Shown here: positions 1-22,910 of the stretch, in pieces
Layout: each line of letters begins with the position of its first letter
Numbering within the stretch: the stretch's first letter is position 1
NCBI GenBank assembly: GCA_001600695.1
Contig: BCKQ01000004.1
Span: 947,513 to 1,011,512, forward strand
Direction of reading: 5' to 3'
From: Ascoidea asiatica JCM 7603
Taxonomy: Eukaryota; Fungi; Ascomycota
DNA length: 64,000 bases
Position numbers and translations under genes: made by a program
Notes under the pieces: generated by a model
The model's database searches: none
What the model was told of the DNA's origin: nothing
What the model saw: the letters and a program-made list of their open reading frames with translations, nothing else

Positions 1-1200
1 ATGTTTTTTTTCAATCTTGGCTGTGCTTTATCTCAAAATACAACTCAATTAATTGTTTGTAGATTTTTTGCAGGTGTTGGAGGTGCTGCTCCATTGTCTG
101 TTGGTGCTGGTGTTTTAGGTGATTTATTTAATGCGAAAGAAAGAAATTTTTGGGGTTCAATTTATGCCTTAGGCCCAACATTAGGTCCAACTCTTGGGCC
201 TGTTATTGCAGGGTTTATTGTTGAAAATACTAGTTGGAGATGGGTATTTTGGGTTCAATTAATGATGAATGGTGTGATTGGAGTTCTTGGTTCTATGTTC
301 TATGAAGAATCTTATACCCCAACTTTGTTAAGAAAAAAGGCTGCAAAATTGAGAAAAGAAACTGGAAATCCAAATTTAATGACAATTTATGATATTGCAG
401 ATGGAGAAACTTTAGCAGGTAAATTTTATTTGAATATTTCAAGGCCAATAAAATTATTGCTTACGCATCCAATGGTTTTTGGTTTAGGTATTTATATGGC
501 TTTACTCTATGGTTTGATGTATATTTTAGTTACAACTTTTCCTACTGTTTTTGAAACTTATTATGGTTTTAGTACTGGTGTTGCAGGTTTAATGTATATT
601 GCCTTAGGTATTGGTTATTTCTCAGGTATATATATTTGGACAAGAGCTATTAATAAGAGTTATAATAAAAGTTGTGAATTAAATAATGGAGTTGGTAAAC
701 CTGAATTTAGATTACAATATCTTTATTGGTCTGGATTAATAACTCCAAGTGCTTTATTAGCATTTGGTTGGGTTGCAGATAAAAAACTTCATTGGATTGC
801 TCCTGCAATTTTTGCTGCTTGTTTCGCATTTGGTGTTGTTTGTATGTTTCAATGTATTCAAAATTATTTGATTGATATGAATCCAAGATTTGCAGCATCC
901 TCTGTTGCAGCTTGTACTGTTTTTAGATCTTTATTCGGTTTTGCTTTTCCATTATTTGCACCTAAAATGATTAGTAGTATTTCAATTGGTTGGACTTGTA
1001 CAACATTTGCTCTACTTGGTTTCTTATTAGGTGTTCCATTCCCATTATATGTTTATAAAAATGGTGAAAAATTAAGAAACTGGGCTAATAGAAGAATGGA
1101 TAAAGAAAAAGCTAAAAGAGATGCTAAAAATTTAGCAAGATTAGAAAAACAAAATGAAGCAAAACAAAGTAAATTAAAAATGAATGAAAAAAATGAATGA
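1..1200 (+). CDS. MFS drug:H+ antiporter (DHA1 family); 5' part lies before the window
   Basis: Multiple hydrophobic helices and DHA1 motifs (LIVCRFFAGVGG, GPTLGPVIAGF, WRWVFW, ESYTPTLL, KPEFRL). Aligns to the 2817..4583 protein from about residue 200, so the Met at base 1 is internal. Confidence 0.9.
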   Translation: MFFFNLGCALSQNTTQLIVCRFFAGVGGAAPLSVGAGVLGDLFNAKERNFWGSIYALGPTLGPTLGPVIAGFIVENTSWRWVFWVQLMMNGVIGVLGSMFYEESYTPTLLRKKAAKLRKETGNPNLMTIYDIADGETLAGKFYLNISRPIKLLLTHPMVFGLGIYMALLYGLMYILVTTFPTVFETYYGFSTGVAGLMYIALGIGYFSGIYIWTRAINKSYNKSCELNNGVGKPEFRLQYLYWSGLITPSALLAFGWVADKKLHWIAPAIFAACFAFGVVCMFQCIQNYLIDMNPRFAASSVAACTVFRSLFGFAFPLFAPKMISSISIGWTCTTFALLGFLLGVPFPLYVYKNGEKLRNWANRRMDKEKAKRDAKNLARLEKQNEAKQSKLKMNEKNE

Positions 1201-2816
1201 AAATAAAATTTTAATCAAAAATATTTCATTATTTATCAATATCCTTATTCTACAATTCTCCATATTACCTTATTAAACAATATTTATACATCTTTTTTTT
1301 TTATAATATATTTTTTCTGAATTTCAATTTTATAGCATATTTTTTTATTTTTCAACTATTTCAATTTCTCTACTTCTATTGTTTTTTTTTTCAACCATTC
1401 TCTTTTTAGAGGGATCTATACATATATATATTTAAAAATATTCACAAATGTAATAAATAATTTATTTGGTAATTAACTATTTTTAGTGCAATTGATTTAG
1501 ATTATTTTGATGTCTCATCTTTCACTTATTTCTAAAACTGTTTTAGAAGCTTTTTTTTATGTCAATTTTTGAAAAAAAAACTAAAAGTGTGTTAAGAATT
1601 TACCTGCAAAGCCAAAAATCTGAATGATTCATTTTTTTTGTTATTTTTGATTTTTTATTGATTTCTTATTAAATTTTATAGAAGATATTGCTGAATCAAT
1701 ACATGAATATAATATTAAATGAAAAAATTATGAATTTAATGAAATAGATACTAATGTGGTTGATATTTTCAATAAATTCATGAGAATTGTTTCTTTTATA
1801 AATTTTTAAAAAAACAGAAAAAGAGCATTGAAAGAACTACTATGAGCTTAACTTGTCTAATATTCAACAAATGAATAAAACTAAAAGTGACTGGAAATCT
1901 CAAAGTTATCCAAGTTATAAGTCATGAAATAATTATTGACGCAAAATAACAAGCTAAAAAACTAGAGAATGATACTTTACTCAAATATTAAGTAAAAAAA
2001 AGGTGGTTTTTGTATTTATTGTCTATTAAAATATTTGTATACAGGCATTTCATATTTAGAGACTATTTTCATTTAACCGGGCTTGCATGAACGAGACCTA
2101 GGGAAAGGATACCCACAGTTTTGGCGCTGAAAGATTAAATATACCGCTAGACTTTTCACACGCAGAACCAAGCATAGAAATCCAGAAAATTGGTAACCCG
2201 TAGAACCATCCAGAGAGTAAGAGACCAAAAGCCTATCTCCGACAAAAGTGATCTGATTTATAGGGGATTCAAATATGATTAGTATACGGGAAAGCAAAAC
2301 TTATCTCAATTCAGTGGGGGACTCCTGTGCTTTCAAAGATATTCCGAAAGGCCGATTTGTTGTGAACAAATCTTCCAGTTTTGCGTGTCCAGAAGCGCAA
2401 AAGAAACTGTTCATCACATTGTGGATTCTCGTGGATTGGTGAGACAGAGAATCGCCAAATGAGGCAGTCTTCCGATCTCTCTGTACTCACAGTTCGATTA
2501 GATAGATTCATGAAAATAAATTTATGGAAAAATAGAATGTCTTCTTTGAGCTTATAAGAATAAATTATCTCAAATCAATGTGTACATTTGTATATAAACA
2601 AATCAGTTTACTTCATATTCTTTAAAATGATTTATTTAGTTTATTCAATTAAATTCATTTTGCTTTGTAGTAAATCAAAAGTTATTTAAAGGTTAACTTC
2701 AATTTCAATTTCAATTACAATTTTATCCTTTACATTGACTTTTAATTTGACTTAAATTTTATCAAATTTGTATAAGATACTAAATTTCTCGAATATATAA
2801 AATAGAAATATTACAA

Positions 2817-4583
2817 ATGAATTCAAAAGATACAATAAAAACTACTTTACCTTCATCAGATGAAAATAATTTAGATAAATCTTCAACAATATCCTTTAAT
2901 GATGCTTCGGACATTGAATCAAATAATAACCCGAATTTCATACCTCAAGATATCATCAATGATGCGGAAATTGAAAGACAGTTGACATTAACAAGAGAAA
3001 AAACAATAAGATCAATATTATCTGAAAGAGTAGGAAATGAAAGTGAAGATGATATATATGAAGGTGCTGGTGCAATTTTACCAACAAGAAAAGATGGTAT
3101 AGAATTCAAAGCAATTGATCCTGATTTAGTAACTTGGGAAAATGAAAATGATCCAGAAAATCCAAAAAATTGGGCACATTTGAGAAAAGTTAGAGCTGTT
3201 TCTTTAGCTTCTATTTATGCTTTTGTCTCTCCAATGTGCTCTTCAATGATTTCTCCAGCTGTAACTGACATTGCTGAAGATTTCAATTTGACCAACAAAG
3301 CTGTAAAAGCAATGATAGTCTCAATTTTTTTATTAGCGTGGGCGATTACTCCATTATTTGTTTCTCCATTATCTGAAATGTATGGTAGAAAAATTGTATT
3401 GAATGTATCTATATGGTTTATGCTTTTTTTTAATCTTGGCTGTGCTTTATCCCAAAATACAACTCAATTAATAGTGTGTAGATTTTTTGCAGGGGTTGGA
3501 GGTGCTGCTCCATTATCTGTTGGTCCCGGTGTTTTAAGTGATTTATTTAATGCTTCTGAAATTAATTTTTGGAATTCAATTTTTAGTATTGGCCCAACTG
3601 CCTCTCCTTGTTTAGCTCCAGTTATTTCTGGTTGGGTTACTCAATGTCTTGGTTGGAGATGGGTTTTATGGATTCAATTTATTGTTAATGCTTCTGTGGC
3701 TGTAGCTGGTGCAATATTTTATGAAGAAACATATACTCCTACTTTATTAAAAAAAAAAGCTTTGAAATTAAGAAAAGAAACTGGTGATAATAATTTAAAA
3801 ACAATTTATGAAATTTCTGATGGTGAAACTGTTCTTGGTAGATTTTATATTAATGTTACAAGACCTTTAACACTTTTAATAACGAATCCAATGGTTTTTG
3901 GTCTTGGCTCTTTTATGGCTTTATTATATGGTTTATTATATCTTTTAGTATGCTCTTTTCCAACAGTTTGGCGTGTTAGATATGGTTTTAGTTCAGGAAT
4001 AACTGGTTTAATGTATCTAGCATTTGGTGTTGGTTATTTATTTGGTTTTCCATTTTGGACAATATTAATTGGAAAGGGTTTTAGAAAATTAACAGCCGAA
4101 AATGGTGGGGTTTCAAAACCTGAATTTAGATTACAATATCTTTATTGGTGTGGAATAATAAGTCCTTCTGCAGTTTTATTATATGGATGGACCGTTGAAT
4201 ATAAAGTACATTGGATTGTTCCATGCATTGGTGCAGCTTTTTTTGCAACTTGTTTCATTAATGTCTTTCAATGTGTTCAACCGTATTTAATTGATATGAA
4301 TCCAAGATTTGCAGCTTCTTCTGTAGGTGCCTCAGCTGTTTTTAGATCTTTCTTCGGCTTTGCAATGCCAATGTTTTCTCCATTTATGTTTAGTGGAATT
4401 GGTTATGGTTGGGGTTGCACAATTTTTGCATTTGTTGGTTTTGCTTTAGGTGTACCTTTCCCATTGTTTGTTTATAAAAAAGGTGAAAATTTAAGAAATT
4501 GGGCCAATAAAAATATGGAAAAATCTCAGGCTAAAAGAGATGCTAAGAATTTAGCAAGATTAGAAAAACAAAGAATAAATTAG
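2817..4583 (+). CDS. MFS drug:H+ antiporter (DHA1 family, Tpo/Flr/Mdr1-like), tandem paralogue
   Basis: VTWENENDPENPKNW, PLSEMYGRK (motif A), WRWVLW, ETYTPTLL and PEFRL motifs; about 12 TM segments; 588 aa. Confidence 0.93.
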   Translation: MNSKDTIKTTLPSSDENNLDKSSTISFNDASDIESNNNPNFIPQDIINDAEIERQLTLTREKTIRSILSERVGNESEDDIYEGAGAILPTRKDGIEFKAIDPDLVTWENENDPENPKNWAHLRKVRAVSLASIYAFVSPMCSSMISPAVTDIAEDFNLTNKAVKAMIVSIFLLAWAITPLFVSPLSEMYGRKIVLNVSIWFMLFFNLGCALSQNTTQLIVCRFFAGVGGAAPLSVGPGVLSDLFNASEINFWNSIFSIGPTASPCLAPVISGWVTQCLGWRWVLWIQFIVNASVAVAGAIFYEETYTPTLLKKKALKLRKETGDNNLKTIYEISDGETVLGRFYINVTRPLTLLITNPMVFGLGSFMALLYGLLYLLVCSFPTVWRVRYGFSSGITGLMYLAFGVGYLFGFPFWTILIGKGFRKLTAENGGVSKPEFRLQYLYWCGIISPSAVLLYGWTVEYKVHWIVPCIGAAFFATCFINVFQCVQPYLIDMNPRFAASSVGASAVFRSFFGFAMPMFSPFMFSGIGYGWGCTIFAFVGFALGVPFPLFVYKKGENLRNWANKNMEKSQAKRDAKNLARLEKQRIN

Positions 4584-5070: not shown

Positions 5071-5844
5071 TTAAGCAGCTTCTTCAAGCCCAGTCTCATT
5101 GTCACTTTCACCATTGATATACTCAATATTATCTTCTTTGATTTCTTGCACTATTTGATCATTTTTTTCATTACTTTCTAAAGAATCCTCTTCAGGATCT
5201 ACATTCAACATCTCATTTCTTAAAGTCTTTTGTGATTTCAAAAGATTCAATCTACCTTCTAATAACAAAAATGATGATAAAGCTTTCTTTTTTTTGGTTA
5301 TTAAATTTTTAACACCCTGAATATTCTTTATTATATTATCAAAAAGAATTTTACTTTCTTCATCTTCATTTTGTTTTGAAAGTATATACCCCCCTTTGAC
5401 TAGTAATAAGTTTTTAATCCAAAAGCATAAAATATTGTATGAGCTGTTGACTTTAGAAGTGGAATCATAATTTTCTTGGAGATAAGTAGATATAATTAAA
5501 AAAAGATTACTCAATCTTGAAGTTGAGTTCAAACTTTTCACTATTCTGAAAATAGTCAGATCTATTGGATATTTTAGAAAATTTTCATTTTTATTTTTGA
5601 ATTTGTTACTTTTATTAGAAACACCCTGAAGATAATCAATATTGAGTAAATAATTGATTATCGGTATTTCAGTGATAGAATGTTCTTCAAGATTATTGAG
5701 ATACTGAGATGTTGATTCAATCAATTCTTCAGTTTGCAGTTCACCATTGTTTTCTTTTTTATTATTGTAAAGATTCTTTTTTAGTTTTTCTTTAGCCTCA
5801 AGGTTTGAACTAACCTTAGAAATAGGGGTTGCTTCTACTTCCAT
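5071..5844 (-). CDS. UTP9: UTP9-like SSU-processome (UTP-A) protein, C-terminal Utp12-type domain only
   Basis: LLLEGRLNLLKSQKTLRNEM...IEYINGESD resembles the Utp9 C-terminus as I recall it (LQGRLEML...IVYANGESD). RRPE and Reb1 motifs upstream fit a ribosome-biogenesis gene. UTP5 is the alternative call. Confidence 0.65.
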   Translation of the reverse strand: MEVEATPISKVSSNLEAKEKLKKNLYNNKKENNGELQTEELIESTSQYLNNLEEHSITEIPIINYLLNIDYLQGVSNKSNKFKNKNENFLKYPIDLTIFRIVKSLNSTSRLSNLFLIISTYLQENYDSTSKVNSSYNILCFWIKNLLLVKGGYILSKQNEDEESKILFDNIIKNIQGVKNLITKKKKALSSFLLLEGRLNLLKSQKTLRNEMLNVDPEEDSLESNEKNDQIVQEIKEDNIEYINGESDNETGLEEAA

Positions 5845-6288: not shown

Positions 6289-9200
6289 TCATATTGATTT
6301 CGAAAAACCAAAAGGAAGAGAAGAAGTTGAAAAAGAGGTTGAATTTGAGTTAGAGGCAATAGAATCATTCTCCGTTTTATCAGATAATATATCATGTAGA
6401 AAACTATTCTTTGAACGCTTTATCACGTCTGGTGTTTCTAAAGGATTCCTCAAATTAGTCAAGCTTCTTTTTCTTTTTTTCTGATGAGTAGGCTCCACGA
6501 TTTCTATATCCGACTTGCTTTCTTCGGTACTATCCACAAGATCAATTATATTCTCATCATTGAAGCCATTGAGCAAACTTTCATTGGATAATGCACTAAG
6601 CTTTTTGAATGAAACCTGATTTAATCTTTCCTTAGAGGGAGTATATTTTTTTTCCACCGAGAAACATTGAACAATTTTTTCATCCTTTGGCAAAATCTTA
6701 GGTGTAGGACTACGAGTTATAGTATTAGTATCAATATTGAATCTATCAAATTTATCAAATCTAGCAGAGCTATCAGATATATCAGAGCTTTCAGAGATAT
6801 CAGAGCTTTCATTGATCTCATCTAGTGAAATTATATTTGGATCACTTTTGCTATAATCATCTTCTGACTCAGAAAATAAAGATTTAAGGCTAACTATATT
6901 TTGTCTATCAGACATCGGAGAAGGAATTAAAGTTCTATTTTGTTTAGTTTGCTTCTTCATAATTTCCTTCCTAATGTTACTATTCTGTTTCCTATTCTTT
7001 TCCAATGAAAAACTTTCTGGAAGATTAATTGTTCGATCTTTCCTCATTCTAAAATTGCATTGTAATTTATTAGTCAAAATTGTGAGTTGTTTCAGTTTTT
7101 CCTGAATTTTTTTGAATTTTTCATTATTTTTAAAGGAAGAGCAACTTTGAATCATATTTCTAAAATTGTCTATTTTGGGAACGATAGCTCCTAATAGTCC
7201 ATCAAATTCCTCTAAATTTAACAAAACAAGTTTTTTTAGCAAATTCATGAATGGACCCAATGAATCTTCAAGTGTTTGAAGAAAACAAGAAAGATCTAAA
7301 TCATCTGAATAAATTAACTCGACTAAAAATTTAGATAATCTCATCACCTGTCTATCAACCTCGATAAATAAATGCCTAGCTTCTTGTGAAGCTGAAAATC
7401 TTTCATTGTATTTTGAAGAGCTACTTTTTAAATCTAATACATCTTCGTCGACTAGAACTTCTTCAACAAATTCAATTTCACTGCCAGTACTACTTTCGCT
7501 ACTTTCGATATTTTTTTCATTAACCGTTGTTGACGCATTTTCATTATCAAAATCCTTATTTTTTTGGGTGATGCCAATCTCACTGCCTAATTTGATATTA
7601 TCTAGAAAATGCCTTCCATACCTAAAACTATTTTTAAGGTCATTTTTCTCAACTGGGCTTTTCAAAGGTGATTTATTCTGAGATTTATCTTTGTTTTGAG
7701 TGCTATACCTTTGAGATTTCAAACTTTCTTTGTGGATTTCATTTTTAGCCTCCGTTATGATTTCTTGATCTTTTTTATTCTGAGTTTTATTTTCACATTT
7801 AGGCAATAAATTCTTATCAAGAGGTTTTTGGGCTTCTGGGATCTTCTTAACAATCTTAGTGCCAAAAAAAGAATCACTAGCGAGCCTCTTTTCAATTGAA
7901 GATATATAGTCATCGATTTTACACTTATATGAATTAACAACAAAATCTAGTGCTCTTGAAGTTTTCTTTTTCTCAGTTGAAGAAGACTTTTGCTCTTTGG
8001 AGGTAGACTCATTTATACTTTTTTTGTAACTTTCCGGTGAAGAAATTCCTGCTGAAGTAGCACAAAAACTTGTCAATGGTGTATCACTTTTAAAGTCGGA
8101 AGAATCATAATCAAATATTTCTTTTTTCCCACTCTTAGGATCTGAATAAATATCACTATTTATAGCACTACATTCACTTGAATTTCTCGTATAGTCTATA
8201 AAAGAATCCGTTGATGGTATATCGGATGTTATTTCACTTACTATTTTTTTGCTTTCCACTTTTTCGCTTCCACTTGAAATCTCTTTAGCCATTTCAGAGG
8301 AAAAAATATTTGAACTCATAGAGTGAGAAACTGTTGATTTTTCAATTTCTTTGTTTTTATCTGTCTGTGCTGTATCATCTTCTTCATCATCAGAAAGGGA
8401 AAAAATATCAACTTTTGAAAGATCTTGAACTTTATATTGTCTTTTCCATTCTTCTGAATCATTACTTTTTAGAGGGAGCTTATTTGAATCAATTTTCATG
8501 TTAGAATTTGAATTATTAGGTATATTTTTTTCGTCTGCAGATTCAGAGTCTCTAGGAAGAAGTTCAAAATCATCATCCTCGGAAGAGCTATCGAAATCAG
8601 AAAAGTCATCTATTGGAAATCTTGAATCATTATCACCTAGTAAATTCACTAAACCATGATCATCATCGAAATGAAAATCCTTTATTAATTCTCTTGCATC
8701 TTTTACCGAACACCATTTTCCATTAATAATTTTACTTTTGTTTTTTTCTAAAGTCGCAATTTCAATGTCTTCTTTAGACTTGCTATTTGAATATTTTGAG
8801 TCGGTTCTAGAATAATTCTCATAAGAGTTGGACAAACTATAACCGATATAAATAGTTCGAAATTCTACTGAATTCAATTTATCAAGGTAATATAAAACAT
8901 TTTCAAGACGTAAATCATCATCGAAGTCCTTTTTGGAGCCAACGGAATTTAAATTTATTTCTAGAATGCTAATTGTCACAGCGCAATAAATCAATGCTTG
9001 GATATTAACATAGCCATCACTGAATCTTCTTGGAACATAAAAGGTTTGAGAAATTTTTCTTTGATCGACTTTGAAAGTATAAATATCACAAATATCTTTT
9101 ATATTTATCGGTTTTCTCAAAATTGAATTTGACAGACTATCTGTTTTATTTCTTTGTAAAATTTCTCTTCTTGAACTTCTTTGGGAATAATTTGGGTTAA

Positions 9201-10695
9201 CTAAACCTCTTATTTTATTCAATTTTTCCGGAGTTAGTGAAAATTGATAAGGATATCCATGAAATTTTTTATAATCCCTTGATTTGATATCCCAATGTTT
9301 TAAAAATTTTAATTCATATTTTGAAACGAATAAATCATTATTTTGATAAAATTTCAGATCTTGAAAAAATAAGATTGGATTTAAAACTTTTGATAACCCA
9401 TATATTACAGAAAATTTTCTCGCAATAACTAAAGGTATCCAAATTCCTCCACACAAAGTTTTATCATTACTTTCATATAATATACCATTCTGTTCTTTAT
9501 AATTGTTCAAAAATAATCTTCTTAAATTTTTTCTTGCGGACTCACCTTTAAGATTCTCATAAACATCAAACAAATGATTTAAGTTTATATAATTATCAGA
9601 TACTTTTCTCAATATTCTTATTTGTTTATCATAATTCATATATACAAAATATTCAAAGAATTCAATACCACAATAACTTGTTTTTGAGACTCTATTAAAG
9701 GATAATAGAGGTTTTAAGAGTTTAAAGATTTTAAATTTTTTTGATAAATTTCTTGCTATTGGTAATGGTAACCAAATACCTTGAAAAAAAAATTGTAAAT
9801 TTTTATCAAAATTTGAGTAAAATTGATATTTATTATTAATTAAATTTAAACATTCAATTTTTATTTGTTTTGAAAATTTTTTTGATTCATTATGAGATAA
9901 TAAAGATTTAAATCTAGATACATTAACCCAACTGCCAATTTTTTTCCTTGGATATAAATTTTTTAAACCATTGATTTGTAATAAATAACATTCATCATTT
10001 TCGAAAAGTATTGACTTTAATGGTACAGAATAATCACTCAAAGTTGGTTCTATTGAAAAATTAATTGGATAATCTTTCAAAATTGTTAAATTTTTTGTTT
10101 TAAATAAATTTGATTCATATAAAATCTGATGATTTTCTTTTCTTTTTGATTTATGATCTTTTTTAAAGCCTTCTCTATAAAGACTTGAAGGAGAGAGAAT
10201 ATTGAAATCTTTCATGGTTTTATCATTTTCTAGATTACTATTTTTATATATATCATTTTCGTTAGTATAATCCGAAGATTTAATTTCAAATTCTTCAAAA
10301 CCTTTATTTTTTTGCGTACTTTGTATATTTTTAATACTTTGAATATTTTGATTGTTTTGATTATTTTGTTGTTTGTTTTCAGTATTTCGAAAGTTTTTAT
10401 TCTTTTTATTCTTTTCAAAATCTTTAGTATTTATCATCATATCTTTTCTTTTTGAAATTTTATTTTCTTTAACTGATTTAAGATATCGACTAGGATTGTA
10501 CTTTATAGTGATTTTGTGACTAATTTCATTTTTGCTGTTATTGCTATTACTATTGTTTTCATTATGATTAAAAGTTTGCTTATCCTTATTCTTATAATCT
10601 TTATTTCGATTAGCCTTCTTATTGCTGATGCTATCCTTTATCTTATCGTTATCATTTATAATTTCAAAAAAGTGATCACAAGAAAACTGGACCAT
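6289..10695 (-). CDS. Large nuclear protein with three tandem APSES/KilA-N DNA-binding domains
   Basis: Domain 1: RKKIGSWVNVS...FQGIWLPLPIARNLSKKFKIFKLLKPLLSF. Domain 2: SKTSYCGIEFFEY...ILRKVSDNYINLNHL...GGIWIPLVIARKFSVIYGLSKVLNPILFF. Domain 3: VPRRFSDGYVNIQAL...INGKWCSVKDARELIKDF. Compare Mbp1 (SARYSGVDVYEF...KRKKDDWVNATHIL...QGTWVPLNIAKQLAEKFSVYDQLKPLFDF). C-terminal KKRKR NLS-like motif. Confidence 0.85.
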   Translation of the reverse strand: MVQFSCDHFFEIINDNDKIKDSISNKKANRNKDYKNKDKQTFNHNENNSNSNNSKNEISHKITIKYNPSRYLKSVKENKISKRKDMMINTKDFEKNKKNKNFRNTENKQQNNQNNQNIQSIKNIQSTQKNKGFEEFEIKSSDYTNENDIYKNSNLENDKTMKDFNILSPSSLYREGFKKDHKSKRKENHQILYESNLFKTKNLTILKDYPINFSIEPTLSDYSVPLKSILFENDECYLLQINGLKNLYPRKKIGSWVNVSRFKSLLSHNESKKFSKQIKIECLNLINNKYQFYSNFDKNLQFFFQGIWLPLPIARNLSKKFKIFKLLKPLLSFNRVSKTSYCGIEFFEYFVYMNYDKQIRILRKVSDNYINLNHLFDVYENLKGESARKNLRRLFLNNYKEQNGILYESNDKTLCGGIWIPLVIARKFSVIYGLSKVLNPILFFQDLKFYQNNDLFVSKYELKFLKHWDIKSRDYKKFHGYPYQFSLTPEKLNKIRGLVNPNYSQRSSRREILQRNKTDSLSNSILRKPINIKDICDIYTFKVDQRKISQTFYVPRRFSDGYVNIQALIYCAVTISILEINLNSVGSKKDFDDDLRLENVLYYLDKLNSVEFRTIYIGYSLSNSYENYSRTDSKYSNSKSKEDIEIATLEKNKSKIINGKWCSVKDARELIKDFHFDDDHGLVNLLGDNDSRFPIDDFSDFDSSSEDDDFELLPRDSESADEKNIPNNSNSNMKIDSNKLPLKSNDSEEWKRQYKVQDLSKVDIFSLSDDEEDDTAQTDKNKEIEKSTVSHSMSSNIFSSEMAKEISSGSEKVESKKIVSEITSDIPSTDSFIDYTRNSSECSAINSDIYSDPKSGKKEIFDYDSSDFKSDTPLTSFCATSAGISSPESYKKSINESTSKEQKSSSTEKKKTSRALDFVVNSYKCKIDDYISSIEKRLASDSFFGTKIVKKIPEAQKPLDKNLLPKCENKTQNKKDQEIITEAKNEIHKESLKSQRYSTQNKDKSQNKSPLKSPVEKNDLKNSFRYGRHFLDNIKLGSEIGITQKNKDFDNENASTTVNEKNIESSESSTGSEIEFVEEVLVDEDVLDLKSSSSKYNERFSASQEARHLFIEVDRQVMRLSKFLVELIYSDDLDLSCFLQTLEDSLGPFMNLLKKLVLLNLEEFDGLLGAIVPKIDNFRNMIQSCSSFKNNEKFKKIQEKLKQLTILTNKLQCNFRMRKDRTINLPESFSLEKNRKQNSNIRKEIMKKQTKQNRTLIPSPMSDRQNIVSLKSLFSESEDDYSKSDPNIISLDEINESSDISESSDISDSSARFDKFDRFNIDTNTITRSPTPKILPKDEKIVQCFSVEKKYTPSKERLNQVSFKKLSALSNESLLNGFNDENIIDLVDSTEESKSDIEIVEPTHQKKRKRSLTNLRNPLETPDVIKRSKNSFLHDILSDKTENDSIASNSNSTSFSTSSLPFGFSKSI

Positions 10696-11521
10696 ATTAC
10701 ACTATCTTTTAGAATAAAAATGTAACTTATTAGATAAATTATGAAGAAAAACTAGGCAATTGACTAGCCTTGAAATAACTTTTAGTATGTTTAATTTACT
10801 TTATTGTATTGATATTCTTTTATTATTATTGTATTATTTTATCTTTGTTGATTTATGCTCAAAACAGTAATCATGAATTTCAAATATATTTTTCCAGATA
10901 ATCTGAATTTGTTAGTTTCCTTATTTCCAAAGTTTGTTTCCATTTAATCTATGCCACTGTTAACGCTACTTACTTTTTCTTTCGCGTTTCTCCTATGTTT
11001 TTGGTGTTTAGGGTAAAATCCGCAGGAATCCGGATAGGCATCATACCCAACGCTATTGCGTGCAGTACACTAACGCGAATTATTTAGCGTGCGTTTTTTT
11101 AGCCTTCGTTGCGTACAATTACTAAAAACAATATTAGCAACGCAATCTGCGTTAGCGCAGCACACGTTGCACCAAAAAGTAGTCGTGCAATGCAATAGTG
11201 CGAACGCATCGCACAACGCTTTCCTGTTCCAGAATAAATGCGCAGTGTCCCGTTATCAAGAGTATTGCGGCTAGTTTGAAAACTAGCCTCTGGTAACTAA
11301 AAATTCCAGCCGCAAGCGTGATATCCCTGCAAGAGCCAGCATTCTCACCAGCCATTGAATCTCGATTTGAAGTTTTTGGGTAAAATAAGCCATTTCACCG
11401 CCTTTGTAGCCACATTGAATCCAAAAAGGGACGCAAGGCGCATAAGTGTTGTTGTTTGTTGATGTTTTGTTTGTGGTTGCTTTCCTATTTGGGCCTTTTT
11501 CAGTTTGTGTAAACAGAGAAA

Positions 11522-11546
11522 TACCAAATGCGGGAAAATGTAAACA
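11522..11546 (+). promoter_or_regulatory. Mcm1-Fkh composite element (CLB2-cluster type) upstream of CDC5
   Basis: TACCAAATGCGGGAAAATGTAAACA has CC-N6-GG followed by GTAAACA at the spacing of the Mcm1-Fkh2 consensus. A second GTAAACA lies at 11509-11515. Confidence 0.7.
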
Positions 11547-12510
11547 CGTCTTGCTTACTTTCTTCTGAATTTGTTCATTTCTATTCAAAATTTCATTTAC
11601 TTTTATTAAAAGCAGAAAAATTCCATTTTCTCACAGTCAATTTCTGTCTTTTTGCAACTCTTTTAATCGATTTATTCGCCATTTCATCTTCAATTCTTGT
11701 TCATTTTCAGTGAAGTTTGATTAAATGCAATTCAATTTCATTCAATTCTGGTTTTCTTTTTTTTCAATTAACAGCAAATCACTGTCTTCAAGCTTTAATA
11801 TTTTATTTCAAGTTAATATACTTTTTTTATCAAAACTATCACTTCAAAAGGGATTTATTTCACTTACTCATCTTTGATTTTTATTCTACAATTCAAATAA
11901 ATATTAGCTTTATTCTCTTTTTTTTTTTTGATTTTAACTCAAGTTACAATAACTGATCACTAATATCTAATAATTAACAATTATCTCTATAATAATATCA
12001 TCTATATTCACTTCAATGATAGTTATATAAGACTTAAGACTTTATCAAAACTTTTCTTATCATCTTCTTTTCTTATCATATCTTTTATTTAATTATTTAT
12101 TTATATCTTATACCAAAATTTTATTCTTAATACCAATTTATATCCAATTATATACCAGATTATTTTATATCCAATCTTATATCCAACTTTATATCTAATT
12201 TAATATCCAATATACTTTTTCTATATTATAAACTGTATCTTTATCTTCATCTGTACCTTACATAAATATCTATCTCTATTAAAATTAATATCATTTTGCT
12301 TTATCAAAAACTTCAATATTATTTTCATATTATTTATCTTTATTCATCAATCATTATCATTCAAAATCTTATTTCCCTAAAATTTCATACTTCAATCACT
12401 TTATTAGACTTTTCAGATATAATTCTCCATATTACCTAAATAATATTCAAGTTATATTTAATTTATATCCCAAACCTAAACCTAAATTTAATATTAAAAC
12501 TTTTTCAACA

Positions 12511-14535
12511 ATGGGTCAGCCTTTACAAGTTATTGCTTCTCAAGATCTTAATGCAAGAACAAATTTAAGATCAAATATGATTAACCCAAATTTGAATAAT
12601 AATATAAATCAAAATCTAAATTTACAACCTCAAGTTCAACAAAAACAACAAAAAAAGAAAAGAGAAAAATTATCTGCTTTATGTAAAACTCCTCCTTCTG
12701 TCATTAGAACAAGAGGTGGTAGAGATTATCAAAGAGGTTTATTTTTAGGTGAAGGTGGTTTTGCAAGATGTTTTCAAATTAAGGATGATAGTGGAAAAAT
12801 TTATGCTGCAAAAACTGTTGCTAAAGTTTCAATCAAAAATGAAAAAACTAAAACAAAATTATTATCCGAAATTAAAATTCATAAAAGTATGAATCATCCA
12901 AATGTTGTTCAATTCATAGACTGTTTTGAAGATAATGCTAATGTTTATATACTTTTGGAAATTTGTGCAAATGGTTCTTTGATGGATTTATTAAAAAAAC
13001 GTAAAAGTTTAACTGAACCTGAAGTTAGATTTATGATTGTTCAAATTATTGGTGCAATTAAATATATGCATAGTAGAAGAGTTATTCATAGAGATATTAA
13101 GTTAGGTAATATATTCTTTGATTCTGAAATGAATTTAAAAATTGGTGATTTTGGTTTAGCTGCAGTTTTACCTCCAGGAAAATCAAGAAAATATACAATC
13201 TGTGGTACCCCAAATTATATTGCTCCAGAAGTTTTAACCGGTAAAGTTAAAGGTCATAGTTTTGAAGTTGATATTTGGTCAATTGGTATAATGATGTATG
13301 CTTTATTATTTGGTAAACCTCCTTTTCAATCAAAAGAAGTAGATAAAATTTATAAAAGAATTCAGAATACTGATTATTCTTTTCCTTCAAATAAAATTGT
13401 CTCTGATGATGCTAAACAATTAATCTCAGATATTTTATCTTTAGATCCATTGAATAGACCTTCTTTAAATGATATTTTACATTATAAATGGTTTAAAGGA
13501 CCATTCCCTAAAAAACTCGATCCTGAAATTTTGAATTCAATTCCATTTAGTTATTCAAACTTAAGTGCTGTGGATTCTGAGGCAAATTTTTATGGAGCTC
13601 AAGTTGCTTCTGGCCTACTAAATATTGCTCCAAAAAATCCAATAGAAATTTTAAAATCAGATTTAGAATCAGAACAGCCAAAGGCTATTTTACCACAATC
13701 TTTATCTCCAGGTGGTACTAGTAATAAATATAAAGAAATGGTTGTTGTAAATCCAACTGTTTCAAAAAGATTTACTGAAGAAAATCTAATGAATAACATG
13801 ATGAAATCTCCAGCTAAAAAAATAAATTATAATTCAAAATATGATAAAAAATCAGATCAAATTTTAGCAAATGAATGTTTTGAAACTCTTAATGGTATAA
13901 ATATTGCTGAAAGACAAGTAAGAATGAGATCTAGTGTTCAAGAAAAAATAGTTATAAATTCCAAACCAATTTTAATCAGTAAATGGGTAGATTACTCAAA
14001 TAAGCATGGATTTTCTTATCAATTATCAACTAATGATATCGGAGTTTTATTCAACAATGGAAACTCAATTTTAAAATTAGCTAATAATCAAGATTTTTGG
14101 TACATAATTGAAGATAGAATAAAAGGTTGGCTGGCTGATAGTTTCAAAAATGGTCAAGGTCCAGCTGAATTAAAAAGAGAACTAGAAATTGTTGATTTTT
14201 TTGCCAAATATATGAAAGCAAACCTTTGCAAAGTTTCAAATGAAGATAGTGTTAGAGATGAGGATGTTTGGTTAAGAAGATATAGTAGATATGAACCATA
14301 TGTGATGTTCGAACTAAGTAATGGATCTTATCAATTTAACTTCAGAGATCATCATAAAATTTGTATATCTCATAAAGGTAAAATATTTACTTATATTTCC
14401 CCTGATAGAGTTGCCAATACTTTCCCATTAGTTGATTTATTAAAATATGGTGGAATACCGGGTCATAAAGACATTAATTTTGAAGAAAAATATTTGTTAA
14501 TGAAGCAAGCCTTAAAACAAAAAGCTGATATTTAA
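12511..14535 (+). CDS. CDC5: Polo-like kinase
   Basis: LSALCKTPPS, GEGGFARC, HRDIKLGN, DFGLAA, ICGTPNYIAPEV and the polo-box motif SKWVDYSNKHGFSYQL. Confidence 0.98.
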   Translation: MGQPLQVIASQDLNARTNLRSNMINPNLNNNINQNLNLQPQVQQKQQKKKREKLSALCKTPPSVIRTRGGRDYQRGLFLGEGGFARCFQIKDDSGKIYAAKTVAKVSIKNEKTKTKLLSEIKIHKSMNHPNVVQFIDCFEDNANVYILLEICANGSLMDLLKKRKSLTEPEVRFMIVQIIGAIKYMHSRRVIHRDIKLGNIFFDSEMNLKIGDFGLAAVLPPGKSRKYTICGTPNYIAPEVLTGKVKGHSFEVDIWSIGIMMYALLFGKPPFQSKEVDKIYKRIQNTDYSFPSNKIVSDDAKQLISDILSLDPLNRPSLNDILHYKWFKGPFPKKLDPEILNSIPFSYSNLSAVDSEANFYGAQVASGLLNIAPKNPIEILKSDLESEQPKAILPQSLSPGGTSNKYKEMVVVNPTVSKRFTEENLMNNMMKSPAKKINYNSKYDKKSDQILANECFETLNGINIAERQVRMRSSVQEKIVINSKPILISKWVDYSNKHGFSYQLSTNDIGVLFNNGNSILKLANNQDFWYIIEDRIKGWLADSFKNGQGPAELKRELEIVDFFAKYMKANLCKVSNEDSVRDEDVWLRRYSRYEPYVMFELSNGSYQFNFRDHHKICISHKGKIFTYISPDRVANTFPLVDLLKYGGIPGHKDINFEEKYLLMKQALKQKADI

Positions 14536-18734: not shown

Positions 18735-21700
18735 CTATCCTCTTAAATACGTTAAATGCTCTTTATAATTTCTATTGCTCCAGTCGTTGAAACCTTCACC
18801 ATCTACAACACTGTTCAAATCATATAAATAACTCAAATAATTTCCCCATATCTTCGAACTTTCACTTAATACCTTTGAGTTACCAACCATTAAAATACCA
18901 TTACAACCTCTAGTGATCAACGAATTAAATCTATTTTCGTCATTTATGAATTTCATTTGATCTAAGTTGTTATCTTTGGTTAAAATTTCAGATTTCACCG
19001 TTGAAATAATAATAAATTCCTTATAATGATCTTGAAATGATTCCAATGTACCAATTTCAATTCCTTTGACTTTGTTTATTATAGAGTTTTCAAATTCATT
19101 CACATTATTATCTTCAAATAATACAACTCTTTGCTTTGATGATAATTGCTTGAACTCAGTACCTGTTAAATCTTCTTCATTCTTATTAGTGTCATCTTCT
19201 TTGTTGTTTTCCATAATTGAATATCTTCTATTATAAAACTCCTCATATAACTGTTTGGCAAGCTGCATTCTTTGTCCAGTATATAATGTGATTATTCCAA
19301 TTTTTTCATTACTTATATTACAAACCTCATTAAGGAATTTAATTAAAATAGCAATTTTCTTTACTTCTTCTTTATTCTCATATGTTATTTGATTAATAAA
19401 AAAATTATCAACATTGTTAAATTTCTTTTTATAGTAAAATTCTCTTTCTTTATAATATTTATTATTTATTTGATCCCAAAATAAAACTGGAATTGAAATC
19501 TTAGGTATTAATCTTTTATTCAAATTAACTTTTTTAATAATTATATCATTATCTTCTTTAACAAATCCATGAATTAAATTTCCTTTGTAGAAAAAATTAG
19601 AAGGAAATTTAACTAATTTTGAATTCATTCTATATTGTTCATTCAATAACATTGAAGTACAATTTTTATTGATTAATACTCGATTAAATAATGAATCACT
19701 TAAATTAACATAATCTTCAACATTATTATTATTGTTGACATATGGTCTTAATTGTTTGATATCTCCAACTAAAATCAATTTATTGCAATTTCTACTAATT
19801 GGCAATAATGATAATCCGTTTGATGTTTGATTTGCATCATCAATAATAATTGAATCAAATTTAATATCTTCCAATCTAGAGTCTAATGAAGAAAAACATG
19901 TTGTAAAAATAACATCAAATGAATTAAAAAATTCATCAATAAATTTTTTCAAAACTTTATTATTTCTTTCTTTGACAACTTCATCTTTTTCAAATTTATC
20001 ATTCAAATAAATTTCAATTAAATCTTTCTCATTGGAATTTAAAATTAAATTATGAAAACTAAATTCTCCAATCTTTCTATTGATATTATATTCTTCTTCT
20101 TTTAAAATTGGAACTAATCTACAGATTTTTAAATCTCCATTTAACTCATTCAAATCTAAACAAGCTTTATCAACAGATGAACTTACTCCAGAACAATATA
20201 GTATTGGTTTAGAGTTTTTCTTAACTAAATTAGATATTATCGAAGAAATTGTAATCGTTTTACCGGTACCTGTATATCCATTAATTATTGAAAATTTATT
20301 CTGATAAACAAAATCAATTACTTTCTTTTGTAAAAAATTACAGTTTTCTGGATATAGAATTTCATTCAATGTTTGATCATTTGGTGTTATGGTTAGGGGA
20401 TTGAATTCAAAATTTTCAAATTTTTTACCTAAAATCAAATTCATTAAATATTCTTTTAATTCAATTTCTTTTGTTGAAATTCTGAAAAGTGTAATAATAA
20501 TTCTTGAAAATACTAAATTAAAAGGTAAAATATTGAAAGATTTGTTATTAGAAACATTAATAGGTAACTCAAAATCTTTTTTTTTATTATCATTTGAACT
20601 TTTCTTTTCCTCATTTTTACGAATGTTGTCTTTATCAAGAAAATGTAAATCATCATCATCATAATAATCATCATCTTCTTCATTTTTGCCTAACATTTTC
20701 AATGCTTCACTAACTAAAGCATAATCATCATCATCTTTACCATATGGATCAATTAAAAAAGTATTATAAATATTTCCATCTGAAGATTCATAACTATATT
20801 GTAAAATTGATAATTTTAATTCTGGGTTATAATCATTATTTGGTAAATCTTCAATAAAACAAAACATCAATTTATATAAATCTGGTTTCCCATTATCATA
20901 GGAATATTTTAATGCAATGATTTGATCATTACTCAAATATGGCAAATTATAATTCGTATTCAATCTGACAACTGCAGTCAAATCATTTAAGTTGAATTTG
21001 ATTGATTTATATGGAATAAAAGCTAAATTTTTAGAAAATTTATGATTTTTATTATTTGAAGGCATCATTAATTGATAGACTTGTTCATTGTAGATTAAAT
21101 TTGTATTATGAAATAAAAATTCATTGAAAGTATCATAATATGAATCGATTTCTGGGGCTACTAAATTCACATCTAAGTCAAAATTTGGGGCAGAAGGTGA
21201 CAATAATTTTTGATTTCTACTCTTAATTTTATCCATATTATCATTTTTAGATACAGCATTTGAGGAAGCGCTTTCGGATGAATATAAATATTGATTAAAA
21301 TGATCATCATCATTATGCCAAAAGACATAGTCATCATTTAAATTTTCATTATTTATATCAGAACTCTCATTATTCAAAGAATTGTTAATTAAATGATGAT
21401 TATGAGACTTGGAACTATTATTTTTAAAATTACTTTCATAAAGAAAAATATCAGCCAAATTAATATTGTTTAGTTTATTTAGAATTTTGAAATTGTTTTT
21501 TTTCAAAATAAAACTATTGATATAATTTTTGTTTAAAACAAGAGAAATAAACTGATCACTCTCAATTTCTTGATTATTGAAATATTTTGATTTAATATTA
21601 TGTAAACAAGAATCGTTTTGTTCATTATTACAAAAAAAGATTAATTTTTTATTATCATTAGTTAAATTTGCATCATTGGTTAAAGTAAAATCAACTAATT

Positions 21701-22910
21701 CATTTGAGATTTTATTAATTAGAATGAAATTTAAATCATTTAAGTTTGAATTTGAACAAGATTCACATTTTATTAGTAATAAATTGATATTTGAATAATT
21801 TATCAAACTAAAAGAATTATGATTATTGAATTTCATATGAAGAAAAAAATGGGAAGAATTATTTAATGAATTACCTGAATTACAAAAGATTTTTTTACAA
21901 TCATTACAATGAATCAAATAGTTTGAATTAAAATCATTACAATAAGAGCAATGAGAATTTAATAATTTTGTATTTGAAATTGTATTATTCAATTTACTTG
22001 AATCTAATTTTGAATCTGAATTAGAGTTTAAATTATTTGAATTGATTGAGAATTTATTCAATTTTTCTAAAATTGAAGAATTTTTGTTTTTTTTGAAAAA
22101 ACTATTTCTTTTAGAAGAATTTGACCTTGATAATGAGTTTCTTTTCGCGTGATTTGAGTGATTTGAATTTGAGTTATTTGAATTATTTGTATTATTATTT
22201 GCAAAAGAAGAAGGATTATAATTATTGAAATTATTACTTATAATTGGAGAACTTATTGGTACATTATTATTGGTATTTTGAATGGCAGTATGGGTAATAT
22301 TGTTATTATTTTGGGTATTATTTGGAATATTGTTTTGATAAGAAGAATTTCTATTATTATTTATTGAATTTCTTTTATTGAAAGAAGCAGAAGTGTTTCT
22401 CTTATGGTATATACTACTTCTTCTACTTGAAGAGGAATCATTTGAATTATTATTATAAGAATTATTGTTATTATAACTGTTGTTAGAAATGTTGTTGTTG
22501 TAGTTGTTATAGTTATTGTTATTATTATAGTTGTTATTGTTGTTGTTATTGTTATAGTTGTTGTAGCTATTGTTATTGTTATTGTTATTGTTATTATAGT
22601 TATTATTGTTATTATTATAGTTATTGTTATTGTTATTGTTATTGTTATTGTTATTGTTATTGTTATTGTTATTGTTATTATTATTATAATTGTTGTTATT
22701 ATTGAAGGTATAATTAGACATTAATGGACTATTAACTCTTGAATTATTCATTAAATTGGTATTGATATTAGCATTGTTGTTTATATTATTATTTATATTA
22801 TTATTCAAATCTAATTGAAGATTCAAATTAGTATAATCCAATTTTGAAAAACGTTTTGAATGACGTTTTTGATGAGTTGGTTTATTTGAAACATTAACTT
22901 CAGTTACCAT
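18735..22910 (-). CDS. UPF1-like SF1 helicase paralogue (Upf1/Ecm32 family) with degenerate ATPase motifs and Asn-rich N-terminus
   Basis: CH zinc domain HCSYC..CNDCKKIFCN..SSH..H...H..CESC; GYTGTGKT, IIIDDANQ, LVGDIKQL, QYRM, GIITLYTGQ, ESFQDHYKE and NRFNSLITRG. Confidence 0.88.
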   Translation of the reverse strand: MVTEVNVSNKPTHQKRHSKRFSKLDYTNLNLQLDLNNNINNNINNNANINTNLMNNSRVNSPLMSNYTFNNNNNYNNNNNNNNNNNNNNNNNNNNNNYNNNNNNYNNNNNNNNNSYNNYNNNNNNNNYNNNNNYNNYNNNISNNSYNNNNSYNNNSNDSSSSRRSSIYHKRNTSASFNKRNSINNNRNSSYQNNIPNNTQNNNNITHTAIQNTNNNVPISSPIISNNFNNYNPSSFANNNTNNSNNSNSNHSNHAKRNSLSRSNSSKRNSFFKKNKNSSILEKLNKFSINSNNLNSNSDSKLDSSKLNNTISNTKLLNSHCSYCNDFNSNYLIHCNDCKKIFCNSGNSLNNSSHFFLHMKFNNHNSFSLINYSNINLLLIKCESCSNSNLNDLNFILINKISNELVDFTLTNDANLTNDNKKLIFFCNNEQNDSCLHNIKSKYFNNQEIESDQFISLVLNKNYINSFILKKNNFKILNKLNNINLADIFLYESNFKNNSSKSHNHHLINNSLNNESSDINNENLNDDYVFWHNDDDHFNQYLYSSESASSNAVSKNDNMDKIKSRNQKLLSPSAPNFDLDVNLVAPEIDSYYDTFNEFLFHNTNLIYNEQVYQLMMPSNNKNHKFSKNLAFIPYKSIKFNLNDLTAVVRLNTNYNLPYLSNDQIIALKYSYDNGKPDLYKLMFCFIEDLPNNDYNPELKLSILQYSYESSDGNIYNTFLIDPYGKDDDDYALVSEALKMLGKNEEDDDYYDDDDLHFLDKDNIRKNEEKKSSNDNKKKDFELPINVSNNKSFNILPFNLVFSRIIITLFRISTKEIELKEYLMNLILGKKFENFEFNPLTITPNDQTLNEILYPENCNFLQKKVIDFVYQNKFSIINGYTGTGKTITISSIISNLVKKNSKPILYCSGVSSSVDKACLDLNELNGDLKICRLVPILKEEEYNINRKIGEFSFHNLILNSNEKDLIEIYLNDKFEKDEVVKERNNKVLKKFIDEFFNSFDVIFTTCFSSLDSRLEDIKFDSIIIDDANQTSNGLSLLPISRNCNKLILVGDIKQLRPYVNNNNNVEDYVNLSDSLFNRVLINKNCTSMLLNEQYRMNSKLVKFPSNFFYKGNLIHGFVKEDNDIIIKKVNLNKRLIPKISIPVLFWDQINNKYYKEREFYYKKKFNNVDNFFINQITYENKEEVKKIAILIKFLNEVCNISNEKIGIITLYTGQRMQLAKQLYEEFYNRRYSIMENNKEDDTNKNEEDLTGTEFKQLSSKQRVVLFEDNNVNEFENSIINKVKGIEIGTLESFQDHYKEFIIISTVKSEILTKDNNLDQMKFINDENRFNSLITRGCNGILMVGNSKVLSESSKIWGNYLSYLYDLNSVVDGEGFNDWSNRNYKEHLTYLRG
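22445..22702 (-). repeat. AAT/AAC trinucleotide array encoding the poly-Asn/Tyr tract
   Basis: (TTATTG)n and (TTA)n runs on the plus strand, in frame with the NNNN(Y) tract. Confidence 0.9.

What the first reader, a model, noticed from the sequence alone, without database searches (positions are those of the whole stretch)
6289..10695. Fungal protein with three tandem APSES/KilA-N domains and no ankyrin repeats
Seen: three APSES/KilA-N signatures at about 10026-9696, 9693-9364 (back to back) and 9123-8668 (more diverged, with an insertion). They are followed by a long acidic/Ser-rich region, a helical block and a KKRKR motif. Established: characterised fungal APSES proteins (Mbp1, Swi4, Phd1/Sok2/Efg1, Xbp1, Bqt4) carry one such domain, Mbp1/Swi4 add ankyrin repeats, and KilA-N is thought to be of viral origin. 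Inference: this is a lineage-specific multivalent DNA-binding regulator that could read arrays of CGCG/ACGC-like sites as one polypeptide without Swi6. The recognition-helix and wing residues are diverged, so specificity may be new.
Basis: partly seen in the sequence, partly recalled or inferred. Interest (0 to 1): 0.9.

Follow-up and report, generated by a model that had tools for sequence, protein, structure and literature searches.

The report
Triple-APSES yeast protein family beside MBP1
This gene encodes three copies of the DNA-binding fold of the yeast cell-cycle regulator Mbp1 and belongs to an apparently undescribed family, also present in the workhorse yeast Pichia pastoris, whose gene usually sits head-to-head with MBP1 but has lost the residues Mbp1 uses to read its DNA site.

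Summary
Observation confirmed. The 1468-aa ORF holds three APSES/KilA-N domains (profile-profile E 4.5e-19, 2.8e-13, 9e-10), no ankyrins; AlphaFold gives a confident three-unit module (pLDDT 84, pTM 0.84; Z 13.6 to Mbp1 for domain 2). It is not a lineage-specific oddity: this genome (an Ascoidea, probably A. asiatica) has four paralogues besides intact Mbp1, Swi4 and Swi6, and about 15 further homologues occur in A. rubescens, Komagataella, Cyberlindnera, Wickerhamomyces and unnamed yeasts. In seven of those genomes the gene lies head-to-head with MBP1 (about 0.1-1.5 kb apart); the link is lost in Ascoidea. Each domain forms its own clade, so the triplication is old. Most members add a TFIIS-N-like (TND) bundle and a C-terminal motif, degenerate or absent in this copy. 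Best reading: an MBP1-derived, Swi6-independent chromatin regulator with new specificity. DNA binding, expression and function are untested. No paper found. The scan noted the same architecture at three other places in this genome.

The parts
6289..10695 (-). ORF, 1468 aa, triple-APSES protein (single uninterrupted frame)
   Evidence: A. rubescens orthologue 59% identical over aa 200-700; dN/dS about 0.16 over the module
9694..10026 (-). APSES/KilA-N domain 1 (aa 224-334), basic (net +13), closest to Mbp1/Swi4
   Evidence: phmmer to Mbp1 1mb1 E 1.4e-5; hhalign E 4.5e-19; model residues 16-121
9364..9693 (-). APSES/KilA-N domain 2 (aa 335-444), directly abutting domain 1; keeps the Y-x-G 20-loop; wing replaced by D-x-T-L-C-G-G-x-W
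   Evidence: hhalign E 2.8e-13; Z 13.6 to Mbp1 1bm8, Z 12.9 to PCG2 4ux5; column counts
9091..9363 (-). Linker between domains 2 and 3 (aa 445-535) with a family-conserved W...F-x-G-(F/Y)-P-x-x-F motif at aa 468-485 (9241-9264 for the motif core), predicted ordered and packed on the module
   Evidence: P482 and F485 invariant in 20 members; pLDDT about 87-90 there, under 50 for aa 499-523
8638..9090 (-). APSES/KilA-N domain 3 (aa 536-686), with family signature R-R-x-S-D-G-x-V-N, D-P-D-M-x-x-E-N-E-L-Y-Y-R-D (helix B) and L-N-G-K-W; Ascoidea-type insertion at 8731-8859
   Evidence: hhalign E 9e-10; same secondary-structure order in the model; conservation
7411..8628 (-). Acidic, Ser-rich low-complexity region (aa 690-1095)
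   Evidence: net charge -20, 18% Ser
7036..7398 (-). Helical block (aa 1100-1220), alignable with A. rubescens; at the position where other members have a TND-like bundle, at best a degenerate version
   Evidence: 10.8 bits on the family bundle HMM, above 60 of 60 shuffles but weak; hhalign not significant
6466..6480 (-). KKRKR, candidate nuclear localisation signal
   Evidence: sequence; function inferred
10975..11225 (.). ACGC/GCGT-rich patch in the upstream region (11 in 250 bp; two CGCG cores at 10983 and 11074)
   Evidence: densest of the 23 intergenic regions of the window, next best 6; not shared by the A. rubescens upstream region
12511..14535 (+). CDC5-like polo kinase, divergent neighbour (not the conserved neighbour of the family)
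   Evidence: Pkinase + POLO_box

Best explanation
An old offshoot of MBP1. In a common ancestor of Ascoidea and the Phaffomycetales yeasts, an SBF/MBF-type gene next to MBP1 (most simply an inverted tandem duplicate) ended up with three copies of the APSES domain and without the ankyrin/Swi6-binding half (shown: domain homology, three separate domain clades, head-to-head linkage in 7 genomes; inferred: that MBP1 itself was the parent). The three domains and the conserved linker fold as one unit (predicted). That unit most likely binds DNA or chromatin through basic, backbone-type contacts and a new, family-specific recognition surface, not through the CGCG-reading wing (inferred). The disordered acidic tail and, in most members, a TND-like helical bundle recruit co-regulators of Pol II transcription (inferred from what TNDs do). 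Sharing a short divergent promoter would tie its expression to MBP1 in Phaffomycetales (inferred). In Ascoidea the gene left MBP1 and expanded to four fast-diverging paralogues; this copy is the slowest-evolving one in the DNA-binding module and the orthologue of A. rubescens ASCRUDRAFT_9142, but has a degenerate bundle and lacks the C-terminal motif.
For: Three APSES domains, each scoring higher on Mbp1/Swi4 than on Efg1-type proteins. pTM 0.84 for the whole 488-aa module. Head-to-head with an MBP1 gene (identified by 65-70% domain identity to this genome's Mbp1 versus about 50% to Swi4 for those tabulated; Mbp1 signature read directly for the last two) in K. pastoris, C. jadinii, C. fabianii, W. 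ciferrii, two JGI yeasts and one Logan yeast. D1, D2, D3 each one clade across species (support 98/95, 100/99, 100/100). Domains 1 and 2 are mostly basic like canonical domains. The helix-A S/T equivalent to a phosphate-contacting Thr is kept in domain 1 (19 of 20) and domain 3 (17 of 20); the 20-loop Y-x-G is kept in domain 2 (Y 19, G 17 of 20); R393 in helix B of domain 2 is K/R in 16 of 20 (contacts from PMC4333399; position mapping by eye). Mid-protein bundle profile hits MED26 TND (E 0.009) and Elongin-A TND (E 0.23) in the PDB and Med26/LEDGF clusters in the Atlas (0.87-0.88). One paralogue carries AT-hook-like GRP motifs. Purifying selection, dN/dS about 0.16. No membrane anchor.
Against: No binding, localisation or expression data; no RNA run was listed. 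The base-reading motif is gone and domain 1's helix B and wing are not conserved within the family, as in Swi6-N, which does not bind DNA. Domain 3 is not basic. Trees do not resolve Mbp1 versus Swi4 or Swi6 as parent (AU p 0.28 for a clade with Mbp1: neither rejected nor shown). TND assignment rests on weak scores (Atlas under 0.9; hhalign to this genome's own TNDs E 0.014, probability 3%) and is not established for this copy.
Confidence: 0.5

Rival explanations
1. The three domains are retired DNA-binding folds used as a protein-binding scaffold, like the Swi6 N-terminal domain or the peptide-binding Bqt4 domain; the protein is an adaptor in a nuclear complex, possibly modulating MBF.
For: Wing motif lost in all three domains. 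The most conserved positions are hydrophobic core and likely inter-domain contacts (F333, E348, F350, P482, F485). Domain 3's conserved helix is acidic (D-P-D...E-N-E). Bqt4 structures with Rap1, Lem2 and Sad1 peptides are the next best folds (Z 10.6-10.7). Domain 2 aligns end to end with this genome's Swi6 N-terminus (17.8 bits).
Against: Mbp1 and PCG2 score higher than Bqt4 and much higher than Swi6-N (Z 13.6 versus 10.7 and 7.2). Domains 1-2 stay basic and keep backbone-contact positions.
Confidence: 0.25
2. It binds nucleic acid without sequence specificity, or a structure or repeat (centromeric, telomeric or silenced chromatin, RNA), as an architectural or elongation-coupled factor rather than a promoter-specific regulator.
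For: Backbone contacts kept while base contacts are lost; TND-like bundle typical of elongation and chromatin factors (PMC9987994); SIM-like motifs are modestly enriched in several tails; rapid paralogue expansion in Ascoidea and assembly JXWR01.
Against: Long-kept linkage to a cell-cycle factor fits a regulatory tie better; domain 2 and 3 have family-specific conserved wing/helix motifs that could read bases.
Confidence: 0.15
3. One reading: a one-chain multivalent reader of CGCG/ACGC arrays that replaces or competes with MBF/SBF.
For: Mbp1-like ancestry; an ACGC-dense patch upstream of this gene.
Against: QxGxGxxQ absent in 60 of 60 domains; the second Gln survives only in domain 1 of 5 of 20 members, and Q89 changes abolish binding in PCG2. 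ACGCG is not enriched upstream of family genes (5 of 13, P 0.13). Mbp1, Swi4 and Swi6 are intact here.
Confidence: 0.1

Closest known systems
Mbp1 / Swi4 / PCG2 (SBF-MBF DNA-binding subunits)
   Same: APSES fold (Z 13.6 to 1bm8); highest sequence scores; gene head-to-head with MBP1 in 7 genomes
   Different: Three domains, not one; no QxGxGxxQ wing; no ankyrins or C-terminal Swi6-binding helix; TND-like bundle instead
Swi6 N-terminal domain
   Same: Degenerate KilA-N fold without the Gln wing
   Different: Swi6 has one such domain plus ankyrins; lower structural score (Z 6-7); Swi6 is a separate intact gene in this genome
Bqt4 / MtgA
   Same: APSES fold without ankyrins (Z 10.6-10.7)
   Different: Single domain and a C-terminal membrane anchor; no member of this family has one
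Efg1/Phd1/Sok2/StuA and Xbp1
   Same: APSES domain in a disordered protein without ankyrins
   Different: Single domain; Efg1-type proteins score clearly lower on all three domain profiles; Xbp1 was not compared directly
Unstudied multi-KilA-N proteins of Phlyctochytrium planicorne (KAJ3102828, 7 copies) and Serendipita vermifera (KIM30050, 5 copies)
   Same: Several APSES domains in one chain, no ankyrins reported
   Different: Copies are spaced beads, the chytrid's close to canonical (35% to Mbp1); none carries the D2/D3 signatures or linker; apparently independent expansions
TND proteins (TFIIS, Spn1/IWS1, MED26, Elongin A, LEDGF)
   Same: Family's mid-protein bundle ends in the L...L...W pattern and hits MED26/Elongin-A/LEDGF
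   Different: Weak scores, below Pfam detection; no TND fused to APSES domains is known to me; degenerate in this copy

Membership tests
APSES/KilA-N superfamily | Sequence-profile homology to the KilA-N/APSES domain | tested here: met
   hhalign E 4.5e-19, 2.8e-13, 9e-10; relatives P0004 and P0058 pass the Pfam cut-off
APSES/KilA-N superfamily | Winged helix-turn-helix fold of Mbp1 | tested here: met
   Domain 2 Z 13.6; domains 1 and 3 by matching secondary-structure order only
APSES/KilA-N superfamily | Binds DNA | not testable with these tools
   needs EMSA/SELEX/ChIP
Mbp1/Swi4 (SBF-MBF subunit) | QxGxGxxQ wing motif reading CGCG | tested here: not met
   absent in all three domains of 20 members (motif from PMC4333399)
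Mbp1/Swi4 (SBF-MBF subunit) | Ankyrin repeats | tested here: not met
   no Pfam ankyrin hit in this ORF, its three paralogues or four relatives
Mbp1/Swi4 (SBF-MBF subunit) | Domains nest inside the Mbp1 clade | tested here: inconclusive
   unresolved polytomy; AU p 0.28
Swi6 | One degenerate N-terminal KilA-N domain plus ankyrins | tested here: not met
   no ankyrins; true Swi6 is on contig C14
Efg1/Phd1/Sok2/StuA | Single highly conserved APSES domain of that clade | tested here: not met
   17-20% identity, lowest HMM scores, separate clade with 100/100 support
Bqt4/MtgA | C-terminal transmembrane helix | tested here: not met
   highest 19-residue hydropathy in the last 80 aa is 0.13 here and under 1 in all 21 sequences
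Xbp1 | Xbp1-type APSES domain | not tested
   no Xbp1 sequence was fetched; an unchecked scan note reports an Xbp1-type gene elsewhere in this genome
TND (TFIIS N-terminal domain) | Five-helix bundle with TND profile | tested here: inconclusive
   family: MED26 E 0.009, Atlas Med26/LEDGF 0.87-0.88; this ORF: 10.8 bits, hhalign not significant; not folded

The most novel reading that the evidence does not exclude
A fifth fungal KilA-N subfamily: three fused APSES domains form one rigid reader of a new, long DNA element and are wired through a TND to Pol II co-factors. Co-expressed with MBP1 from a shared promoter, it runs a Swi6/Whi5-independent branch of cell-cycle or developmental transcription that budding yeast lost.
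Probability: 0.3. Interest if true: 0.82.

Novelty: new variant of a known kind. Interest (0 to 1): 0.62.

Why it matters
Fungal KilA-N factors are catalogued as four sub-families: SBF/MBF, APSES, Xbp1 and Bqt4 (PMC4862756). This is a further, conserved one that Pfam mostly misses and databases label as hypothetical or 'HTH APSES-type domain-containing'. It shows a virus-derived fold being triplicated, re-specified and kept beside MBP1 across distant yeasts, a natural experiment on how G1/S factor specificity evolves. Because Komagataella phaffii has a single clear orthologue (PP7435_Chr2-0786), the function can be tested at once in a tractable, industrially used yeast; anyone deleting MBP1 or its promoter there may also disturb this gene.

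Tried and rejected
Single-sequence AlphaFold failed (pLDDT 35). Word-index homologue searches found almost nothing; only the index-free HMM search found the family. Ace2/Swi5-like site ACCAGC: in 9 of 13 upstream regions (12 sites versus 2.4 expected; as good in 1 of 200 shuffled sets; 8 of 80 control regions), but in 0 of 2 held-out loci, so only a weak lead. MCB enrichment upstream of family genes: not significant. SIM-like motifs: 3 versus 1.1 expected in this ORF (p 0.09), enriched in some relatives: inconclusive. Fresh viral origin: no viral match under E 0.001, best 0.027, weaker than fungal Mbp1. Swi6 ancestry: one long-branch join, not supported; the Pfam Swi6_N scan was blank and uninformative. 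The linker's FxGF resembles the optional part of TND-interacting motifs but is predicted buried/ordered, so not pursued. Linkage to CDC5 is not conserved. Expression: no RNA run was listed. Literature: nothing on the locus tags, 'Ascoidea APSES', tandem APSES or Komagataella APSES; the library lacks most subscription papers, and Iyer 2002 and Cermakova 2021 could not be opened.
Full report
Setting. The window is contig C4:947513-1011512 of a 20.3-Mb, 71-contig, very AT-rich yeast genome. The closest homologue of the ORF is Ascoidea rubescens ASCRUDRAFT_9142 (59% over aa 200-700). From that and the genome size I infer Ascoidea asiatica (own knowledge, not shown by a tool). Ascoidea decodes CUG unusually (own knowledge); the three CTG codons (447, 521, 1201) lie outside the domain cores.

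Observation. The ORF at 6289-10695 (-) is one frame of 1468 aa. Standard scans barely see it: no Pfam hit on the full protein, one sub-threshold KilA-N hit, and a match of domain 1 to Mbp1 structures at E 1.4e-5. With family alignments all three regions match canonical APSES domains by hhalign at E 4.5e-19, 2.8e-13 and 9e-10, match each other at E 1e-14 to 1e-7, and the linker control does not match. AlphaFold with 23 sequences gives pLDDT 84.2 and pTM 0.84 for aa 211-698, with the same strand-strand-strand-helix-helix-wing-helix-helix order three times; only part of the linker and the domain 3 insertion are uncertain. Structure search returns Mbp1 (Z 13.6, rmsd 2.2 A, 97 residues, on domain 2), PCG2 (12.9), Bqt4 (10.7) and Swi6-N (6-7), well above unrelated folds. 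Domain 3 was not aligned on its own. The high pTM suggests a fixed arrangement of the domains; that is a prediction.

The family. The same genome encodes three paralogues with all three domains: C2 (1110 aa), C1 (802 aa), C7 (1421 aa). They come on top of intact Mbp1, Swi4, Swi6 and four Efg1-type genes. An index-free HMM search of 1.84 billion representatives found 15 proteins matching the whole module at E under 1e-44 plus one fragment, then a gap to 1e-22. Named ones are from A. rubescens, Komagataella pastoris, Cyberlindnera jadinii, C. fabianii and Wickerhamomyces ciferrii; three paralogues come from assembly JXWR01, whose organism I could not determine; K. phaffii has PP7435_Chr2-0786. 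No named hit came from Saccharomycetaceae or Candida apart from a canonical single-domain protein, which suggests loss or absence there; several hits are unnamed, so the range is not fixed. In a domain tree D1, D2 and D3 are each one clade across all species: the triplication predates the split of Ascoidea from Komagataella and Wickerhamomyces. This copy and its A. rubescens orthologue are under purifying selection (dN 0.28, dS 1.7, near saturation); the other three paralogues sit on long branches.

Synteny. In all seven loci examined from the Komagataella/Cyberlindnera/Wickerhamomyces side of the tree, the gene is divergently transcribed from a KilA-N + ankyrin gene, 161 bp (K. pastoris), 615, 813, about 100-190, 1453, 659 and about 784 bp away. 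These neighbours are MBP1. A PSA1-like mannose-1-phosphate guanylyltransferase gene follows in four of them; from memory PSA1 is also MBP1's neighbour in S. cerevisiae, which would fit loss of this gene from that block. The link is absent in this genome, in A. rubescens and in the three JXWR01-type paralogues; for P0007 the upstream side is cut off. An inverted tandem duplicate of MBP1 is the simplest origin. Sequence supports the SBF/MBF side but cannot pick Mbp1 over Swi4 (AU p 0.28).

What the domains can do. [quoted passage not shown] No domain of any of 20 members has the motif. The wing is variable in domain 1, D-x-T-L-C-G-G in domain 2 and L-N-G-K-W in domain 3. Backbone-type positions are partly kept (helix-A S/T in domains 1 and 3, Y-x-G 20-loop and a basic helix-B residue in domain 2), and domains 1 and 2 are mostly basic, domain 3 not. 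So canonical MCB reading is unlikely, DNA binding of another kind is plausible, and a pure scaffold is not excluded.

Rest of the protein. Thirteen members, including paralogues C2 and C7, share an 88-residue helical bundle ending in an invariant Trp. Its profile hits MED26 and Elongin-A TNDs in the PDB (E 0.009, 0.23, among other weak hits) and Med26/LEDGF clusters in the Atlas: two weak but agreeing leads. TNDs bind disordered motifs of transcription factors and elongation proteins (PMC9987994). Thirteen members share a C-terminal motif of about 60 aa with no known match tested. This ORF and its A. rubescens orthologue do not score for the C-terminal motif and have only a questionable bundle. 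No member has a membrane anchor.

Upstream region. An ACGC-dense patch at 10975-11225 is the densest in the window's intergenic DNA but is not shared with A. rubescens; it may serve this gene or CDC5. An Ace2/Swi5-like site was enriched in the first 13 upstream regions but failed on two held-out loci.

Comparison and novelty. PMC4862756 lists four fungal sub-families (SBF/MBF, APSES, Xbp1, Bqt4). This family fails the defining tests for Mbp1/Swi4, Swi6, Efg1-type and Bqt4; Xbp1 was not compared. Repeated KilA-N domains are not unique: a chytrid protein has seven and a Serendipita protein five, apparently independently. What is new is a conserved, fused three-domain module with its own signatures, a TND-like bundle and long-kept linkage to MBP1. 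I found no paper on it, within a library that lacks most subscription journals. The scan's first readers noted the architecture at three other places in this genome, which I take to be the paralogues found here independently.

Verdict. Real, a new variant of a known kind, function unproven. Best reading: MBP1-derived, Swi6-independent DNA/chromatin regulator with changed specificity (0.5); scaffold 0.25; non-specific or structural binder 0.15; CGCG-array reader 0.1. Interest 0.62.

Noticed in passing
P0017 (KAJ3102828, Phlyctochytrium planicorne) and P0018 (KIM30050, Serendipita vermifera): Independent multi-KilA-N proteins with 7 and 5 copies; the chytrid one is mis-named 'swi6' and has an AT-hook-like motif.
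   Followed up: partly
L023:2108-6370 (-) (G000 contig C7): Paralogue with two AT-hook-like GRP motifs (aa 699, 721) and the clearest TND-like bundle in this genome.
   Followed up: partly
window 18735-22910 (-): UPF1-like helicase (UPF1 Zn-binding, AAA_11/12) with a very long Asn-rich N-terminus.
   Followed up: partly
window 5071-5844 (-): 257-aa ORF with only a weak Utp12/Dip2-family domain (E 0.001); looks like a shortened Utp5.
   Followed up: no
window 11481-11546: TTTCC-TATTT-GGG followed by two GTAAACA sites, resembling an Mcm1-forkhead G2/M element, between this gene and CDC5.
   Followed up: no
window 11339-11352: Two CCAGC (Ace2/Swi5-like) sites; the hexamer ACCAGC recurs upstream of 9 of 15 family genes but failed the held-out test.
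   Followed up: yes
window 12137-12210: Short imperfect 12-bp tandem repeat (TTTATATCCAA-like, about 4-5 units) upstream of CDC5.
   Followed up: no
L012:2323-3585 and L013:1910-3145: Two Efg1-type genes on contigs C8 and C18 with nearly identical N-termini: a recent duplicate; the genome has four Efg1-type genes.
   Followed up: no
window 1-4583: Two tandem, closely related MFS (DHA1-type) transporter genes.
   Followed up: no
L043 and L044: The called start of the family gene may be wrong or follow an intron: P0042 does not translate directly from its locus and P0015 lacks the start of domain 1, which is encoded upstream in frame.
   Followed up: partly
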